IMG/VR virus record: IMGVR_UViG_3300042350_004528 | Coordinates: 234,834 to 298,833 of that record | DNA: 64,000 bases | Strand: one strand, 5' to 3' | Shown here: one piece after another, positions 23,979 to 45,449 of the stretch | How positions within the stretch are numbered: position 1 is the first letter of the stretch | Layout of the letters: each line of letters opens with the position of its first letter | Translations under genes and position numbers: made by a program | The notes under the pieces: model-generated | Database searches by the model: none | The model's input: only the letters and a program-made list of their open reading frames with translations | What the model was told of the DNA's origin: nothing

Positions 23979-26063
23979 ATGGCACAAAAAGTATCATATA
24001 CAGGGGTTTTCTTGGACAAGGATTCAAGAGCCGTATTAGAAAAAGAGTTCAAATCGCAGGTTCCTGATGGATGGGAGTGGATTGCGCATCATATGACCAT
24101 AACTTTAGGGGAAATGGTTGATAAATCGGAATTGGGTAAACAAGTTGCCCTTAATATAGTTTCATTTGGTAAAGATGATAAAGTCATGGCAATTGGTGTC
24201 AAGGGTTACCCTAGTAAAAATGAAAAACCGCACATTACTTTAGCCGTTAATCGCGCTGAGGGTGGTAAACCTTATATGAGTAATTTAATTAAGGAATGGG
24301 TACCATACTCGATCGGTGCCATATTAACTGGTGTTGTCAGTGAATACCCGCCACAATCTAAAGAAACACTTAATGAAGCTTATGATATTAAATCATTACC
24401 GTTCTATAACGATGTTATCAATAAAAACGGTAAAATATATCAGGTTGGTGGGGCTGTTAGAGATTTGTATCTGGGTAAACAATCTAAAGACCTTGACATC
24501 GTTATTAGTGGAATACCAGCTAAGGAACTCGAAGATGTGTTGAAAAAATATGGTAAAGTTGATATGGTTGGTGCGTCATTTGGTGTTATTAAGTTCACAC
24601 CACCAGATGGTGAAGAAATTGATATTGCAATACCAAGAACTGAAAAGAAGAGTGGTGTTGGTTATCAGGGTTTTGATGTGTCGGCTGATCACACTCTCCC
24701 TATCGAAAAGGATCTTGAGAGAAGAGATTTCACAATAAATTCAATCGCTAAAGATAGTGATGGGAATGTTATTGATCCATTCGGTGGGTTAAAGGATCTT
24801 GATTCGAAGGTTATCAAATTAACAAACCCTAAGGCTTTTTCAGATGACCCATTAAGGATGTTAAGGGCGATTCAATTTGCGTCTAGGTTTGGTTTTAAAA
24901 TAGATGAGGAAACGTTTGATGCTATTAAAAAGAATGCGATGACTATTGACGAAATATCAAAAGAGAGAATATTGATAGAGTTTGATAAAATCGTAAACAA
25001 AGGTAATCCCAGAGTCGGAGCTGAGTTATTAGTTTCAAGTGGATTGTACAGGGGCATATTCGGTACCGAGTTTGATGGTGATTTTGAACCGTTTGACCAA
25101 GTAACTAGGAACAGTGAGTTCGCTTACTGGTTGATCCAATCGTTCACCGAACAACCAGACCAATACTATAAGAATATAATGAAAGGTGACATCGATACGG
25201 CTAGAGAGATATCAGCTTTGGCTTATATGTATAACAACTTACCTGGTAACGACAAAGCAAAACAAAGATTTGTTTATTTTAATATAAATAAGATATCACC
25301 ACAGATGTTTAATAGTAATTTCGTGAGAAGTATATTGAGTGATGTTATCAATGACTTTGATTCTCAAAAATACCCAGCTGGTTATTCGGATTTAAAAGTC
25401 AATGGTAATGATTTAATGGCAATGGGTTTAAAAGGTAAAGCTGTTGGTGATATGTTAAATAAATTAATCTCTGCAATATATTCTGATAAAATTGAAAATA
25501 CAAAGAATGGTTTGTTGGGTTTTGTTGAGAGGAATAAGGATATGTTAAATGAATCTGTTGGTGGTACAAATAAGAATAGAGTTGTGTTTTATGATTTTGA
25601 TGGTACTTTAATGGATAGTCCACTTCCTGACACAGGTAAACAAATCTATAAAGAAAAAACTGGTAATGTATACCCACATCAAGGTTGGTGGGGTCGTGCT
25701 GAGAGTTTGGATTTAAATGTCTTCGACATAAAAACAAATCCAGATGTTGAGGCTAAATTTAGAGCTGACTCATCGGATCCAAATACGCATGTTGTTTTAT
25801 TAACCAATAGGTTGTCAAAACTTGAGGAACCAATTAAAAAAGTTCTTGACAAACATAATATGGTATTCGATTTTTATTCTTTTAAAAATGATGGTCGTGA
25901 AAAGGGTGAACGTGTTTTGGATATTTTAGCCAAAGTATATCCGAATACGAATGAAATTGAATTTTATGATGACGATGAGCGACACATTCAAAATGTAAGA
26001 GATAATTTAATCGACACCGATTACGATTTCAAGGTGAATCAAGTTATTGATGGTAGATTATAA
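23979..26063 (+). CDS. Three-domain RNA end-repair protein: 2H phosphoesterase + CCA-adding/poly(A)-pol-type nucleotidyltransferase + HAD phosphatase
   Basis: HHMT and PHIT (2H); VGGAVRD...DLDIV, RRDFTINS, DDPLRMLRA (class II NTase); FYDFDGTL...LLTNR...FYDD (HAD). Confidence 0.85.
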   Translation: MAQKVSYTGVFLDKDSRAVLEKEFKSQVPDGWEWIAHHMTITLGEMVDKSELGKQVALNIVSFGKDDKVMAIGVKGYPSKNEKPHITLAVNRAEGGKPYMSNLIKEWVPYSIGAILTGVVSEYPPQSKETLNEAYDIKSLPFYNDVINKNGKIYQVGGAVRDLYLGKQSKDLDIVISGIPAKELEDVLKKYGKVDMVGASFGVIKFTPPDGEEIDIAIPRTEKKSGVGYQGFDVSADHTLPIEKDLERRDFTINSIAKDSDGNVIDPFGGLKDLDSKVIKLTNPKAFSDDPLRMLRAIQFASRFGFKIDEETFDAIKKNAMTIDEISKERILIEFDKIVNKGNPRVGAELLVSSGLYRGIFGTEFDGDFEPFDQVTRNSEFAYWLIQSFTEQPDQYYKNIMKGDIDTAREISALAYMYNNLPGNDKAKQRFVYFNINKISPQMFNSNFVRSILSDVINDFDSQKYPAGYSDLKVNGNDLMAMGLKGKAVGDMLNKLISAIYSDKIENTKNGLLGFVERNKDMLNESVGGTNKNRVVFYDFDGTLMDSPLPDTGKQIYKEKTGNVYPHQGWWGRAESLDLNVFDIKTNPDVEAKFRADSSDPNTHVVLLTNRLSKLEEPIKKVLDKHNMVFDFYSFKNDGREKGERVLDILAKVYPNTNEIEFYDDDERHIQNVRDNLIDTDYDFKVNQVIDGRL

Positions 26064-29139: not shown

Positions 29140-29982
29140 CTACCTGTTGGTGGGGATTAAGTTATTTAAATATTCTCTATTTTGAGTAAAGATTGGTGTT
29201 TCGACATCCAATTCCCAAGCGCTTCTGGTGTAAACATCCTTTGGATCAATCACAACCGTATCACGATTGACTTCCGCATTGGCACTTTTACGAACAAACG
29301 TCTTTTCAATTTTTCTGATTATACCACCACGTTTTTCTCTTGGTGAGTAATCATTCCAATTTGTACCAGCCTGAAATATCAATTCTTGCATACCATCGGT
29401 CTTAACCCCATGTAATTGTTTTGGTGAGTATAAACTCTGAGCGACCGATGAAATTGAATTTCTGGTCGCATCTTGTTGTCTCCAGATGAAATAATTCTCA
29501 ACCTCAACTTTTTGTGGGATTTGAAATACCCTGGCATCAAACATAGCCAATTTAGGTTCGCTGGCGTATCTTTTATCCGTCACAGACTTTCTCTCGATAA
29601 CATGTAGATTCTTAATATAACGATCCATTCTCAATTTATTAAAGATGGCTGTTGCCATTGAGGCTGAAACGCTCGCCATTTTCTGTAAGTTATTATCGAA
29701 CCAAGCTTGTGTGCCCTCATCTTCAAAATCGGTGATCAAAATTGAAATCTCATCTGATTGCACATACGCAAACTTAGCACCCATAATGTTTTTACATAGA
29801 TATGCCGCTGTCTCATCCATATCATCAATCAAATCCAAATCAAATGGCCTTCTCAAACCTTTTGTATAGGTGTGAAAAGCCTTACCATCAATTCTGATAA
29901 TGGTGTAACCTCTTCTTGGTAATGAAATACGAGTTCTATCCTCATAGTTCGATTTCATTCTGTCTCCTAATGCGTCTTTCAT
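29140..29982 (-). CDS. thg1: Thg1-like tRNA(His) guanylyltransferase / 3'-5' polymerase
   Basis: RIDGKAFHTYT, YVQSDEIS, FDARVF, WRQQDATRNSIS. Confidence 0.92.
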   Translation of the reverse strand: MKDALGDRMKSNYEDRTRISLPRRGYTIIRIDGKAFHTYTKGLRRPFDLDLIDDMDETAAYLCKNIMGAKFAYVQSDEISILITDFEDEGTQAWFDNNLQKMASVSASMATAIFNKLRMDRYIKNLHVIERKSVTDKRYASEPKLAMFDARVFQIPQKVEVENYFIWRQQDATRNSISSVAQSLYSPKQLHGVKTDGMQELIFQAGTNWNDYSPREKRGGIIRKIEKTFVRKSANAEVNRDTVVIDPKDVYTRSAWELDVETPIFTQNREYLNNLIPTNR

Positions 29983-42898: not shown

Positions 42899-43175
42899 AA
42901 GATGCCTCATTCTGGGGTTTGATTGAGGTCTAGTTACATCGGTTTCTTTCGCTGTTTCAAGAACCTGCCGCACTTCTGCTGGTAAAACCCGTCAACACTA
43001 CTCGGCGGAGATGTGTCGCTCTCCGTTACTCCGACCCCCAGCATTTTAACTATAAAGGCTCATTACCACCCTATGAGCGGATGATTGCTCTCCAGTACAG
43101 TTTTCGGTTACCATCTGGGTATTAACCGTGATCCTTTAGTGAGATCCAAACACTCTGAGTACCCCTTACTCGTTG

Positions 43176-43248
43176 AGCGGTAGACAGGATTCGAACCTGC
43201 GACCCTCACCTTGGCAAGGTGATGCTCTACCAACTGAGCTACTACCGC
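43176..43248 (-). tRNA. tRNA-Gly(GCC)
   Basis: TCACC-TTGCCAA-GGTGA. Confidence 0.92.
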
Positions 43249-43362
43249 TTAAAAGACAGCCCACAACGTCCACATTATACCGTTGGTGGGGAATGACGAC
43301 CAGTCAAGTTGTGGTTCTTACTTTATGTCGCCTGCAACAGGTGCCACCCACTTCTGTCTTAG

Positions 43363-43452
43363 CACTCGACATGGGAATCGAACCCACCACCCTTAGCGCA
43401 CCACTGTTATGGTGATTCGAACACCGCTACTAAGGGCTGACCCCAATCGAGT
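43363..43452 (-). ncRNA. tRNA-like RNA with two T-loop hairpins and no D arm or anticodon
   Basis: ACTCGAT/GTCGAGT acceptor; GGTG-TTCGAAT-CACC and GTGGG-TTCGATT-CCCAT. Confidence 0.6.
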
Positions 43453-43665
43453 AAGTTGGGGAACCTATTTACAAGCTTTTGGTTCCCCGATTGATCAAGT
43501 TATTTAATTATTTTAACCTCAAATAAGGCATTCACATCGCCAATAAAGGGGATCGGCTTTAAGGTTTAACCGCCATAACTCTCAGATACGCTCGTCATGT
43601 GACTCTTTCTCCGTTTATTTTAAGATGCACGGATCCCTCTCTGATGGGAGTACAAAACATCTGCT

Positions 43666-43743
43666 TGGTTGCGGGAACGGGATTCGAACCCGTGTAATTC
43701 GGCTTATGAGACCGAGCTGGAACCAACTCCAGTCCACCCCGCA
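43666..43743 (-). tRNA. tRNA-Met(CAT), atypical, CCA encoded
   Basis: TCGGT-CTCATAA-GCCGA; fMet-like 5' end, extended D-stem. Confidence 0.85.
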
Positions 43744-44285
43744 GTAATGAAAGGCTCTGAATCGTCCCTGCGCCATTCTCAGGAGAGCCTTTCGGTTTTA
43801 AATAGATTCGGCGATCGATTATTCCCACTGATATACCTAAGATTCGTTAGATCATAGTAACCATCCACAATGGGCCTATACTCTTACACTCCGTCCGTAT
43901 TTACTCACCTAATCAAATGCGTCATAGGTATTTCAGATACAGCGTTCAGTGCTACCCTCAGGACTTCTTCACCCTACCCCCATAGTTACGTGGCAGATCT
44001 CGCTCGGAAGAAAAGAGCGTGTATCGTAGAATTGTCCAGTATTTCTACGACTTGTGGATTACAACACGACCAATTAAGGCCCCTTACCCTCTCAATCCAT
44101 AATGAGGGACTCGGTCATACTCGTTCCCAACGTATCCGACTGAACTTCCCCATGTCGGTAAACCCCGTTTATTAGAGGTTATACGAATTTCACTTCTTGT
44201 GTGACCTTCCCCATAGCCTTGGAGCCTTCTAGCCAGGTTCACACACCATAACGGATGAGTACGTCCGTTAATCGTGGGGTCTTTT

Positions 44286-44377
44286 GCTGATTAAAGGGAA
44301 TTGAACCCAATCCTCCAGCCCTGTCCACTTCTATCCTGAAGCAACTAGGGCCAGTGTGCCCATTACACTATAACCAA
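44286..44377 (-). ncRNA. tRNA-like RNA with a 24-nt insert replacing the anticodon loop
   Basis: TTGGTTA/TAATCAG acceptor, GTGT/ACAC D-stem, GGCCCT/AGGGCT stem, GGG-TTCAATT-CCC T-arm. Confidence 0.6.
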
Positions 44378-44426
44378 TCGAGAGTTTCGAACCTCTCAGA
44401 CTCAAGTTAATTACTCTTGAGTTTTG

Positions 44427-44498
44427 TAGCGGGGGTGGGAATCGAACCCACGACCTCCAGGTTATGAGCCTGGCGAGCTACCTCTGCTCTACCCCGCA
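44427..44498 (-). tRNA. tRNA-fMet(CAT)
   Basis: U1xU72 mismatch, A11-U24, CCAGG-CTCATAA-CCTGG. Confidence 0.88.
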
Positions 44499-44504
44499 AT
44501 GTTG

Positions 44505-45098: not shown

Positions 45099-45116
45099 AA
45101 TAAGTAAATAAAACAC

Positions 45117-45235
45117 AGGATGCGTTTATACGTGCTCTAACCAACTGAGCTATCGACCTCATACGAAGCCGAGTGGGACTCGAACCCACGACCCCGAGGT
45201 TGACATCCTAAAGTTTAATTTGCGGAATGCATCCT
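45117..45235 (-). ncRNA. Circularly permuted tRNA-like RNA (YrlA/Y-RNA-like)
   Basis: AGGATGC/GCATCCT terminal stem + TTCCGCAAA; T-arm precedes D-arm; acceptor stem closed by a GTAT loop. Confidence 0.75.
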
Positions 45236-45327: not shown

Positions 45328-45449
45328 AGCCCAGAGCTGGATTCGAACCAGCGCCTTTTTTTTCCATAAAAAATTGTTAGATAGTGATTTGCTGAAATCA
45401 TCCACACTGGATGACTCTTTTTTTAATGCTACCGCTACACCATCTGGGC
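45328..45449 (-). ncRNA. tRNA-like RNA with anticodon arm replaced by a hairpin + TTCAGCAA module
   Basis: GCCCAGA/TCTGGGC acceptor, D-loop-like segment, TCATCCA-GTG-TGGATGA hairpin + TTTCAGCAAA, GCTGG-TTCGAAT-CCAGC. Confidence 0.7.

What the first reader, a model, noticed from the sequence alone, without database searches (positions are those of the whole stretch)
43363..43452. tRNA-like RNA with two T-loops and no D arm or anticodon
A 7-bp acceptor and a normal terminal T-arm enclose a CCCTTAG/CTAAGGG stem carrying a second GGTG-TTCGAAT-CACC T-loop hairpin, with an alternative CACCA/TGGTG pairing. Two T-loops recall the interdigitated T-loop elbow-binding motifs of T-box and RNase P RNAs (analogy only).
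Basis: partly seen in the sequence, partly recalled or inferred. Interest (0 to 1): 0.6.

Follow-up and report, generated by a model that had tools for sequence, protein, structure and literature searches.

The report
Conserved phage tRNA-like RNA, two T-arms
A 90-base gene in the tRNA cluster of a lake-water jumbo phage makes a tRNA-shaped RNA that has a second T-arm-like hairpin where the anticodon loop should be; three diverged phages keep it with compensating base changes, so it is a real RNA gene of unknown job and not tRNA debris.

Summary
On the minus strand of window 43363-43452 lie a 7-bp acceptor stem, a canonical T-arm, a 7-bp central stem and an inner GGUG/UUCGAAU/CACC hairpin. The window is the end of a 298.8-kb lake jumbo phage with 27 tRNAs and a tmRNA.

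The element is not unique. Pattern scans and a covariance model found three near-identical strains and two diverged homologs (L145, L151). Across them 98% of proposed pairs hold. Twelve pairs change on both sides: 4 in the acceptor stem, 7 in the central helix, 1 in the T-stem. Between window and L145 the 9-nt linker and 33-nt apical domain are identical, while the flanks are unalignable. This refutes "decayed fragments".

The central helix extends to about 11 bp. It is built from D-side and variable-side nucleotides, so no D-arm or variable arm can form.

The second "T-loop" sits exactly at nt 32-38, the anticodon-loop position. ARAGORN reads two homologs as a poor tRNA-Ser(CGA), so "no anticodon" is not settled.

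Best reading: a tRNA-derived, tRNA-processed, probably non-decoding mimic. Function is unknown and expression was not shown. The family is rare and accessory; the nearest relatives lack it.

The parts
43363..43452 (-). The whole tRNA-like RNA gene: 90 nt, RNA position p = 43453 minus the window coordinate.
   Evidence: Conservation begins and ends at these borders. The flanks are unalignable between window and L145 while the core is identical. Covariance model hits: 117 bits here, 110 bits in L145, 63-88 bits in L151.
43446..43452 (-). Acceptor stem, 5' strand (nt 1-7).
   Evidence: Pairs with nt 83-89. Four of the 7 pairs changed on both sides among lineages and none is broken.
43364..43370 (-). 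Acceptor stem, 3' strand (nt 83-89). Window 43363 is the discriminator-like G90. No CCA is encoded.
   Evidence: Strain L147 turns U7.G83 into U7-A83. Position 90 is G, A and G in the three lineages. It could pair with the U that precedes nt 1 in all three.
43437..43445 (-). Linker nt 8-16 (UGGGGUCAG) that replaces the D-arm. It contains a GG.
   Evidence: Identical in window and L145. UG and GGUCAG are kept in L151. That it acts as a D-loop analogue docking on the T-loop is inference.
43426..43436 (-). Central helix, 5' strand (nt 17-27; A25 bulged).
   Evidence: Pairs with nt 54-63. Seven pairs changed on both sides, including G26-C55 becoming A-U in L151. The helix is also predicted when acceptor and T-arm are enforced.
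43390..43399 (-). Central helix, 3' strand (nt 54-63).
43411..43425 (-). Apical hairpin (nt 28-42): GGUG stem, 7-nt loop UUCGAAU at nt 32-38 (window 43415-43421), CACC stem. It is T-arm-like and lies at the anticodon-loop position.
   Evidence: Stem invariant. Loop is UUCGAAU in window and L145 and UUCGAGU in L151. ARAGORN reads CGA as the anticodon in L145 and L151.
43400..43410 (-). Conserved 11-nt strand (nt 43-53): AUAA...GGU. It can pair back to CACC as the alternative hairpin.
   Evidence: AUAA and GGU are invariant in all lineages. The alternative hairpin is 96% paired but shows no compensatory change.
43371..43387 (-). Canonical T-arm (nt 66-82), loop UUCGAUU (UUCGAGU in all other copies). 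The preceding junction UG (window 43388-43389) is invariant.
   Evidence: One pair changed on both sides and one changed on one side only; none is broken.
43458..43488 (-). Stable hairpin in the 5' leader, ending 5 nt before nt 1.
   Evidence: A hairpin of different sequence ends 3-5 nt upstream of the element in window, L145 and L151 (-14.8, -17.3 and -16.3 kcal/mol; z = -2.9, -2.7 and -5.3). Its role is unexplained.

Best explanation
This is a genuine, selectively maintained small RNA gene. It is a tRNA-derived RNA of class II tRNA size, carried as an accessory gene in the tRNA arrays of a few freshwater jumbo phages.

Shown:
- A covarying 7-bp acceptor stem stacked on a canonical T-arm.
- A conserved GG-containing linker in place of the D-arm.
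- A covarying central helix of about 11 bp built from D-side and variable-side nucleotides.
- At its tip, an invariant hairpin (G-UUCGA(A/G)U-C, the T-arm consensus) followed by a conserved AUAA...GGU strand.

Inferred:
- Transcribed with the array, it would be matured like a tRNA. The acceptor plus T-arm is what RNase P needs for 5' cleavage. The 3' end would be trimmed and given CCA; the phage encodes its own CCA-adding and repair enzyme.
- It does not decode. It acts as a tRNA mimic.
- The apical hairpin, with the GG of the returning strand, may form a second elbow-like knob. The RNA would then offer tRNA-recognising factors (processing, modification or repair enzymes, or a host tRNA-targeting defence) an acceptor/T-arm domain with no usable anticodon.
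For: Homologs and covariation:
- Homologs exist in three near-identical strains and two diverged phage contigs.
- 98.4% of pair cells are kept, and 12 pairs changed on both sides against 3.5 in shuffles.
- Window versus L145: 20 of 42 outer-stem columns differ but only 2 of 50 other columns (Fisher p = 8e-7). The flanks are unalignable.

Against decoding:
- No D-stem or variable-arm hairpin can form, because their nucleotides make the covarying central helix.
- ARAGORN's own drawings show a weak D-stem (four weak or partial pairs in L145, 2 bp in L151) and, in L151, an unpaired variable region.
- The acceptor sequence is free to vary (ACUCGAU, GGUUGGU, CCCCGAU). Every canonical tRNA-Ser in the related phages starts with GG, mostly GGAG or GGAA.
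- The loop's sixth position varies A/G, as T-loop position 59 does.
- The arm is about 15 bp long, against about 10 bp in a tRNA.
- The phage's tRNA set otherwise holds almost only U34 or G34 anticodons.

Context:
- The phage encodes a CCA-adding enzyme fused to repair domains, and a Thg1-like enzyme.
- A YrlA-like tRNA mimic lies in the same array.
Against: - No RNA evidence. Three metatranscriptomes that hold contigs of neighbouring RNAs have none over 43404-43659, and only foreign T-loop matches at 43363-43403. tRNA-sized RNAs are usually lost in such libraries.
- The loop sits exactly at nt 32-38 with U33 and a purine at 37, and the total length fits a class II tRNA. ARAGORN calls two copies tRNA-Ser(CGA).
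- Only three independent lineages are known, so covariation rests on two divergence events.
- The inner hairpin and its alternative are invariant, so neither is proven.
- The gene is dispensable. It is absent from the nearest relatives L002 and L003 and from a co-occurring strain.
- No binding partner is known.
Confidence: 0.55

Rival explanations
1. It is a working but structurally aberrant tRNA that decodes UCG with anticodon CGA. It would be a D-armless tRNA with an extended anticodon arm, comparable to mitochondrial tRNA-Ser(AGY).
For: - The loop lies at nt 32-38 with U33, C34-G35-A36 and a purine at 37. The length is 90-91 nt, as in class II tRNAs.
- ARAGORN calls the L145 and L151 copies tRNA-Ser(cga) at default settings.
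- G at the discriminator position in 2 of 3 lineages.
- The linker keeps a GG for the elbow.
- UCG is used at 7.6 per 1000 codons.
- Irregular tRNAs are known in phage clusters (PMC5389517).
Against: - The variable-arm hairpin, the main SerRS determinant by established knowledge, does not form, and the D-stem does not form either.
- Acceptor pairs 1:72 to 4:69 are not conserved, unlike the canonical tRNA-Ser of relatives.
- An 11-12-nt bulge sits directly 3' of a 4-bp stem, and the arm is about 5 bp too long.
- A37/G37 variation and U38 are unusual for readers of UCN codons (own knowledge).
- tRNA-Ser(UGA) is already present.
Confidence: 0.25
2. It is a conformational switch or trans-acting regulatory RNA. 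The conserved CACC segment alternates between two GGUG partners, or the apical domain pairs with another RNA such as the large structured RNA that accompanies it in all three lineages.
For: - The mutually exclusive pairings GGUG/CACC and CACCA/UGGUG both survive in all lineages, and the segment is invariant.
- All three element-bearing lineages also carry the large RNA.
- In the window the large RNA holds an exact 8-nt complement of CACCAUAA.
Against: - Duplex energy with the large RNA is no better than shuffles in L145 and L151, and the complement is degraded there.
- Seven of eight viral contigs with the large RNA lack the element in the sequence held.
- Invariance alone does not show switching.
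Confidence: 0.12
3. It is a decayed or chimeric tRNA pseudogene: fragments left by recombination in a variable part of the array, with no function.
For: - It lies in a stretch of about 1 kb with no counterpart in the nearest relative L003.
- It is absent from L002 and L003 and from a strain seen in run X15.
- No RNA contig covers it.
Against: - There are 12 compensated pairs and no broken helix across lineages whose flanks no longer align.
- The 44-nt core is identical between window and L145.
Confidence: 0.04
4. It is an intron-containing tRNA-Ala(UGC). ARAGORN with introns allowed and a lowered threshold proposes a 28-nt intron at 33/34, and the phage lacks tRNA-Ala.
For: - ARAGORN -i -ps80 call.
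- Ala is the only amino acid with no tRNA in the 298.8-kb genome.
Against: - The proposed UGC is not conserved in L151, and G54 and C55 covary as partners of C27 and G26.
- There is no G3:U70 in any lineage.
- ARAGORN's acceptor stem for that model is mostly mismatched.
Confidence: 0.02

Closest known systems
Canonical class II tRNA, in particular tRNA-Ser(CGA)
   Same: 7-bp acceptor stem, 5-bp T-stem with a consensus T-loop, length of about 90 nt, a 7-nt loop at nt 32-38 with U33 and a purine at 37, location in a tRNA array, no encoded CCA (like its neighbours).
   Different: No D-stem and no variable-arm hairpin; their nucleotides pair with each other instead. The stem under the loop has 4 bp and is followed by an 11-12-nt bulge. 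The acceptor sequence is unconstrained. It is below the Rfam tRNA threshold and is not called by ARAGORN in the window.
D-armless mitochondrial tRNAs such as tRNA-Ser(AGY) (own knowledge)
   Same: The D-arm is replaced by a short connector. The anticodon-side helix is lengthened by pairs between connector and variable-region nucleotides. The T-arm is kept.
   Different: Those are decoders that work with specialised mitochondrial factors. Here the helix is longer, carries a large bulge, and ends in a loop that copies the T-arm consensus. The setting is a bacterial virus.
tRNA-like domain of tmRNA
   Same: Acceptor stem plus T-arm, a D-loop analogue without a stem, and a long helix leaving where the anticodon arm would be. 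These phages also encode tmRNA, and L145 encodes SmpB.
   Different: No G3:U70, no message-like reading frame, no pseudoknots, and about 90 nt instead of about 380. Rfam tmRNA matches only the T-loop, at 12 bits.
YrlA / bacterial Y RNA-like tRNA mimics (Rfam RF02553; PMC4201824)
   Same: Non-decoding RNAs that imitate the tRNA elbow (T-arm plus a D-like element). They occur in phages, and some are cut by RNase P and given CCA. A YrlA-like RNA lies 1.6 kb away in this array.
   Different: The topology is permuted: in YrlA the ends form the Ro-binding stem. There is no Rfam YrlA match to this element, and no Ro60/TROVE gene in the phage.
Irregular phage tRNAs and allo-tRNAs (PMC5389517), and the T4 stable RNAs species 1 and 2 (own knowledge)
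   Same: Odd tRNA-shaped genes embedded in phage tRNA clusters. Some are suspected to be regulatory and not decoding.
   Different: allo-tRNAs have 8/4 or 9/3 acceptor/T branches, a long D-stem and a long variable arm. This RNA has 7/5 (possibly 8/5) and neither arm. The T4 RNAs could not be compared here.

Membership tests
tRNA (Rfam RF00005 / ARAGORN cloverleaf) | 7-bp acceptor stem stacked on a 5-bp T-stem with a 7-nt UUCRANY loop | tested here: met
   Both helices are fully paired in all five sequences and show compensatory changes.
tRNA (Rfam RF00005 / ARAGORN cloverleaf) | D-arm: a stem between nt 10-13 and 22-25 | tested here: not met
   nt 17-27 pair with nt 54-63, and 7 of these pairs are compensated. 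ARAGORN's D-stems in the homologs are weak: four weak or partial pairs in L145, 2 bp in L151.
tRNA (Rfam RF00005 / ARAGORN cloverleaf) | 5-bp anticodon stem with a 7-nt loop (U33, purine 37) at nt 27-43 | tested here: inconclusive
   The loop is at nt 32-38 with U33 and R37. However, the stem has 4 bp, 27x43 is a C-A mismatch, and C27 pairs with G54 instead.
tRNA (Rfam RF00005 / ARAGORN cloverleaf) | Score above the family threshold | tested here: not met
   No Rfam tRNA hit even at E <= 10. ARAGORN at default settings is silent in the window, although it calls the L145 and L151 copies.
tRNA-Ser (class II identity) | Long variable-arm hairpin | tested here: not met
   The window has no hairpin. 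The L145 hairpin is not conserved, and the region is unpaired in L151. These nucleotides form the central helix.
tRNA-Ser (class II identity) | Conserved acceptor pairs and G73, as in the canonical tRNA-Ser of related phages | tested here: not met
   Acceptor 5' strands are ACUCGAU, GGUUGGU and CCCCGAU. The discriminator is G, A and G. The canonical tRNA-Ser all begin with GG, mostly GGAG or GGAA.
tRNA-Sec (Rfam RF01852) | Family score, UCA anticodon, and a 13-bp 8/5 branch with a 6-bp D-stem | tested here: not met
   14 bits against a threshold of 47. No UCA anticodon. An eighth acceptor pair (U0 with R90) is possible in all lineages, but there is no D-stem.
tmRNA (Rfam RF00023) | G3:U70, a message-like domain with a tag reading frame, pseudoknots | tested here: not met
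   Pair 3:70 is U-A, U-A and C-G. The RNA is 90 nt. Rfam gives 12 bits, on the T-loop only.
YrlA / Y RNA-like (Rfam RF02553) | Family score, a Ro-binding terminal stem, and a Ro60 (TROVE) partner gene | tested here: not met
   No YrlA hit on the element at E <= 10. No TROVE match in the phage genome.
Interdigitated double T-loop module (T-box stem I, RNase P, L1 stalk) | Two T-loops in a bulge and the apical loop of one short distal helix, packed head to tail | tested here: not met
   Tested at the level of secondary structure only. The two loops cap different arms and are separated by 32 nt and by the covarying central helix. The 3D arrangement is not testable with these tools.
allo-tRNA (PMC5389517) | 8/4 or 9/3 acceptor/T branch, a long D-stem with a tetraloop, a long variable arm | tested here: not met
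   The branch is 7/5 (or 8/5). GGG-UCAG-CCC could form in the window, but it conflicts with the compensated pairs 18:62 and 19:61.

The most novel reading that the evidence does not exclude
This would be the first natural RNA in which a tRNA body carries a second T-arm/elbow module at the anticodon tip. Phages would use such a 'two-elbow' tRNA mimic to engage or titrate machinery that recognises the tRNA elbow or the acceptor/T-arm domain. Candidates are RNase P, the CCA-adding and repair enzymes, the ribosomal L1 stalk, or a host tRNA-targeting defence nuclease. It would be a new class of phage regulatory or counter-defence RNA.
Probability: 0.2. Interest if true: 0.8.

Novelty: new variant of a known kind. 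Interest (0 to 1): 0.62.

Why it matters
Phage tRNA arrays are usually read as codon-supply or anti-defence kits made of ordinary tRNAs. This case shows that a gene the standard tools skip or mislabel (silent in the window, "tRNA-Ser(CGA)" in two relatives) is a separately evolving RNA family under selection.

Its architecture has not been described. The D and variable regions are fused into one helix, and the loop at the anticodon position is T-arm-like.

If it is a non-decoding mimic, it adds a new design to the short list of tRNA mimics (tmRNA, Y RNA-like RNAs, viral tRNA-like ends). It also gives a small, tractable RNA for asking what phages gain from imitating the tRNA elbow. If it decodes, it would be a D-armless tRNA working on bacterial ribosomes, which would also be unusual.

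The same array holds a large, strongly covarying, expressed RNA with no Rfam family. These freshwater jumbo phages are therefore a rich source of uncharted structured RNAs.

Tried and rejected
**Searches for relatives that found nothing or only chance matches**
- Sequence search of the public phage collection found only T-loop matches.
- Exact and spaced patterns in IMG/VR gave nothing or chance hits.
- A two-T-loop pattern in IMG/VR returned 74 loci, but none had this architecture. Most were ordinary tRNAs followed by an orphan T-arm hairpin.
- BLAST, nhmmer and the single-sequence model found no member in 68 loci of related phages. The improved model found none in 48 other related viral records.
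- GTDB genomes gave one hit in an Opitutia MAG. It is a lone T-arm-like word and not a member.

**Models rejected**
- Intron-containing tRNA-Ala: rejected.
- Origin from a tRNA of the same phages: the best global similarity is to tRNA-Trp, only about 3 SD above the mean, and the A1-U72/G73 features are not conserved in homologs.
- The other 90-nt acceptor plus T-arm family in relatives (L055, L005, L008) folds differently and is not homologous.
- Pairing of the apical domain with the neighbouring large RNA is not better than shuffles in 2 of 3 lineages.
- The promoter and terminator scan of 43150-44500 found no promoter and nothing informative near the element.

**Expression**
- Contigs from three metatranscriptomes do not cover the element. 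This is no verdict, because these are assembled contigs and tRNA-sized RNAs are poorly captured.

**Literature**
- Two full-text searches found no description of such an RNA.

Full report
**Setting**

The window is the last 64 kb of a 298,833-bp IMG/VR virus record rated complete. The DNA has 34% G+C. The same DNA is present at essentially 100% of sampled words in at least 14 lake or freshwater metagenome runs.

All 27 ARAGORN tRNAs and a tmRNA lie on the minus strand between about 3.2 and 45.9 kb. Nineteen amino acids are covered; only Ala is missing.

The phage also encodes a CCA-adding enzyme fused to phosphoesterase and HAD "RNA repair" domains and a Thg1-like enzyme. It invests heavily in tRNA maturation and repair.

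**The observation**

On the minus strand, window 43452 down to 43363 reads as a 90-nt RNA with these features:
- Acceptor stem 1-7/83-89.
- T-arm 66-82, directly abutting the acceptor 3' strand.
- A perfect 7-bp stem 17-23/57-63.
- An inner hairpin 28-42 whose loop is UUCGAAU.
- The competing CACCA/UGGUG pairing.

Standard tools do not recognise it. ARAGORN at default settings is silent, Rfam tRNA has no hit at E <= 10, and the only hit is tRNA-Sec at 14 bits. The unconstrained minimum-energy fold destroys the T-arm. With acceptor and T-arm enforced, the best fold (-31.1 kcal/mol) has a 9-bp central stem, two further pairs (26:55 and 27:54) and the alternative hairpin.

**Is it unique?**

At first it looked so. 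Nothing turned up in the phage collection, in IMG/VR by exact word, or in 68 loci of related jumbo phages fetched through a neighbouring gene.

Synteny with the nearest relatives L003 and L002 shows that the element sits in a stretch of about 1,065 nt (44420-43356) that they lack. L003 has a plain tRNA-Met at that position, followed by the same conserved downstream sequence. A metatranscriptome contig from run X15 joins window 43679 to 43362, so a related strain lacks the 316 nt holding the spacer and the element. The gene is therefore accessory.

A 20-nt word from the core, scanned over JGI metagenome contigs, then found four loci. Three are strains 98.5-99.8% identical to the window over kilobases (L144, L146, L147). 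The fourth, L145, is a diverged phage contig. A motif of the neighbouring large RNA brought in eight more viral contigs. The covariance model found a third, more diverged copy in one of them, L151 (63 bits; 88 bits with the improved model).

No further member was found in 48 other related viral records, in further IMG/VR pattern scans, or in GTDB genomes, where the single hit was a chance match.

**Evidence for selection**

Window and L145 differ at 22 of 90 positions. Twenty of these fall in the acceptor stem, central stem and T-stem, and every one preserves pairing. The 9-nt linker, the 33-nt apical domain and the UG junction are identical. Outer-stem columns differ at 20 of 42 positions against 2 of 50 elsewhere (p = 8e-7). 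The flanks do not align at all.

On the five-sequence alignment, 98.4% of 125 pair cells are standard pairs. Twelve pairs changed on both sides: 4 in the acceptor stem, 7 in the central helix and 1 in the T-stem. Shuffles give a mean of 3.5, and slid controls give at most 3.

L151 extends the central helix. G26-C55 becomes A-U and U24.G56 becomes C-G, which confirms the longer helix of the constrained fold. Strain L147 converts U7.G83 into U-A.

A caveat applies. There are only three independent lineages, so the counts reflect two divergence events. Even so, no helix is broken; only a 2x2 mismatch appears, in L151.

**Anatomy that follows**

- *No D-arm or variable arm.* Nucleotides 17-27, where the 3' half of a D-arm and position 26 would lie, pair with nt 54-63, where the 3' half of a long variable region would lie. 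Neither a D-stem nor a variable-arm hairpin can form.
- *The linker.* What remains of the D region is the conserved linker UG..GGUCAG. Its GG could serve as the D-loop analogue for the canonical T-loop (inference).
- *The tip.* The central helix of about 11 bp is capped by the invariant hairpin GGUG/CACC. Its loop is UUCGAAU in two lineages and UUCGAGU in the third. The conserved strand AUAA....GGU then returns to the helix.
- *T-arm likeness.* The loop plus its closing G-C pair matches the T-arm consensus at all nine positions. The one variable position is the sixth, which corresponds to the variable T-loop position 59. The second, canonical T-loop varies at the same position among strains.
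- *Undecided inner fold.* The inner hairpin and its alternative are both fully compatible with all sequences. Neither shows compensatory change, so they remain undecided.
- *Leader hairpin.* A stable hairpin of unrelated sequence ends 3-5 nt upstream of the 5' end in all three lineages. A similar leader hairpin precedes tRNA-Gly in L002 and L003, so it may be a general processing feature of these arrays.

**Anticodon or T-loop?**

The apical loop lies exactly at nt 32-38 with U33 and a purine at position 37. The RNA has the length of a class II tRNA. ARAGORN at default settings calls the L145 and L151 copies tRNA-Ser(cga). The family probably descends from a class II tRNA, and a decoding role cannot be excluded.

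Several points argue against decoding:
- ARAGORN's own drawings show a weak D-stem (four weak or partial pairs in L145, 2 bp in L151) and, for L151, no variable-arm pairing. The L145 variable hairpin is not conserved.
- The acceptor sequence is unconstrained, whereas every canonical tRNA-Ser in the related phages begins with GG, mostly GGAG or GGAA.
- The arm is about 5 bp longer than the D plus anticodon stack, and it carries an 11-12-nt bulge next to a 4-bp stem.
- A/G variation at position 37, together with U38, is unusual for readers of UCN codons (own knowledge).
- The phage's tRNA set is built almost entirely from U34 and G34 anticodons and already holds tRNA-Ser(UGA).

The intron-containing tRNA-Ala idea fails. 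The putative UGC is not conserved in L151, its G and C covary as helix partners, and no copy has G3:U70.

**Mechanism**

Shown: a covarying tRNA-like fold with a sequence-constrained tip.

Inferred from established knowledge:
- An acceptor plus T-arm minihelix is sufficient for RNase P, for 3' processing and for CCA addition.
- The RNA should therefore be matured like its neighbours. Like them, it encodes no CCA.

I consider a non-decoding tRNA mimic most likely, with probability about 0.55. The sub-hypothesis that the apical T-arm and the GG of nt 51-52 form a second elbow-like knob is speculative. A sequence-constrained tip with two exclusive pairings also fits a switch or a trans-pairing role. 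Pairing with the co-occurring large RNA, however, is not supported in two of three lineages.

**Expression**

Three metatranscriptomes hold contigs of the phage's neighbouring RNAs (about 43761-44276 and 42938-43163). They hold none over 43404-43659, and only foreign T-loop matches at 43363-43403. Because these are assembled contigs and tRNA-sized RNAs are poorly captured, this is no verdict.

**Comparison with known families**

It works like a tRNA in its probable maturation. It resembles the tmRNA tRNA-like domain and D-armless mitochondrial tRNAs in topology, and YrlA in being a phage-borne tRNA mimic. It fails a defining feature of each family tested (see the membership table).

The interdigitated T-loop analogy is not supported at the level of secondary structure.

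I file it as a new variant of a known kind: tRNA-like small RNAs in phage tRNA clusters.

**Handling notes**

Noticed in passing
window ~43755-44285 (- strand); homologs L145 6232-6725, L151 963-1455, L152 2895-3390, L153 5725-6145, L154 7900-8365(-), L156 4540-5080(-): A large structured RNA of about 420-530 nt inside the tRNA array.
- Metatranscriptome contigs from three independent runs cover it; one contig carries adapters at both ends.
- Across seven diverged members, 116 pairs are predicted and 36 have compensatory changes on both sides. There are long invariant blocks, two optional insertions, and a terminal hairpin followed by a U-run.
- No Rfam family matches at E <= 10, and there is no hit in the phage collection.
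- It looks like an undescribed RNA family and may be more notable than the element itself.
   Followed up: partly
window 44282-44420 (- strand); L145 459-640; L151 ~827-975: A conserved stretch of about 140 nt ('region A') directly follows a tRNA or tRNA-like gene. In window and L151 it directly precedes the large RNA. It holds two T-arm-like hairpins (GAGAG-GUUCGAAA-CUCUC and GGG-UUCAAUU-CCC). It is not called by ARAGORN or Rfam.
   Followed up: partly
window 45099-45221 (- strand): A Y RNA-like (YrlA, RF02553) match lies between tRNA-Arg(tct) and tRNA-Asp. It scores 45.9 bits (threshold 69), E = 3e-9, with T-arm, acceptor-like stem and D-arm in YrlA order. It is conserved in L003. The phage has no Ro60/TROVE gene.
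   Followed up: partly
window 45328-45449 (- strand); L003 5391-5512; L031 2414-2535: A 121-nt tRNA-like gene with acceptor stem, D-arm and T-arm, but with an A-rich insert of about 50 nt and a hairpin where the anticodon arm should be. Rfam tRNA scores 39.6 bits in a local scan, and ARAGORN does not call it. L055 4942 has a similar design.
   Followed up: no
window 43666-43743 (- strand): An odd tRNA-Met(cat): 78 nt, an over-long D-arm, an encoded CCA, and only 34.8 bits in Rfam. A related strain in run X15 has a different 3' end here and lacks the next 316 nt.
   Followed up: partly
window 42938-43163 and 43250-43355 (- strand): Two intergenic stretches of the array are conserved with L003 and L002 at 86-94%. 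Metatranscriptome contigs in two runs cover the first. They may be further small RNAs.
   Followed up: no
window 23979-26063 (+) and 29140-29982 (-): A 694-aa protein combines a CCA-adding (poly A polymerase head) domain, 2H phosphoesterase-like and HAD 'Swiss Army Knife RNA repair' domains. There is also a Thg1-like 3'-5' polymerase. Together they form a phage tRNA repair kit. L145 encodes SmpB next to an RNase H-like protein.
   Followed up: partly
whole genome G000; L145 6165-6239: The phage has tRNAs for 19 amino acids but none for Ala, although Ala codons make up 48 per 1000. The relative L145 carries a tRNA with anticodon CUA (amber-suppressor type; ARAGORN labels it 'Pyl') immediately before its copy of the large RNA.
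   Followed up: no
L055 6396-6485, L005/L006/L063 4560-4649, L008 274-363; L019 2778-2981; L011 493-598; L049 3179-3279; L145 ~1003-1124: Related jumbo phages hold several other acceptor plus T-arm genes of 90-122 nt that ARAGORN does not call. They include a conserved 90-nt family with a GNRA hairpin in its body. Non-canonical tRNA-like genes seem common in this phage group.
   Followed up: partly
IMG/VR loci L070-L143: A lone T-arm hairpin 22-38 nt downstream of a complete tRNA gene recurs in many unrelated viral contigs, for example L076, L090 and L113. They could be attachment-site remnants or minimal tRNA-like elements. This was not examined.
   Followed up: no
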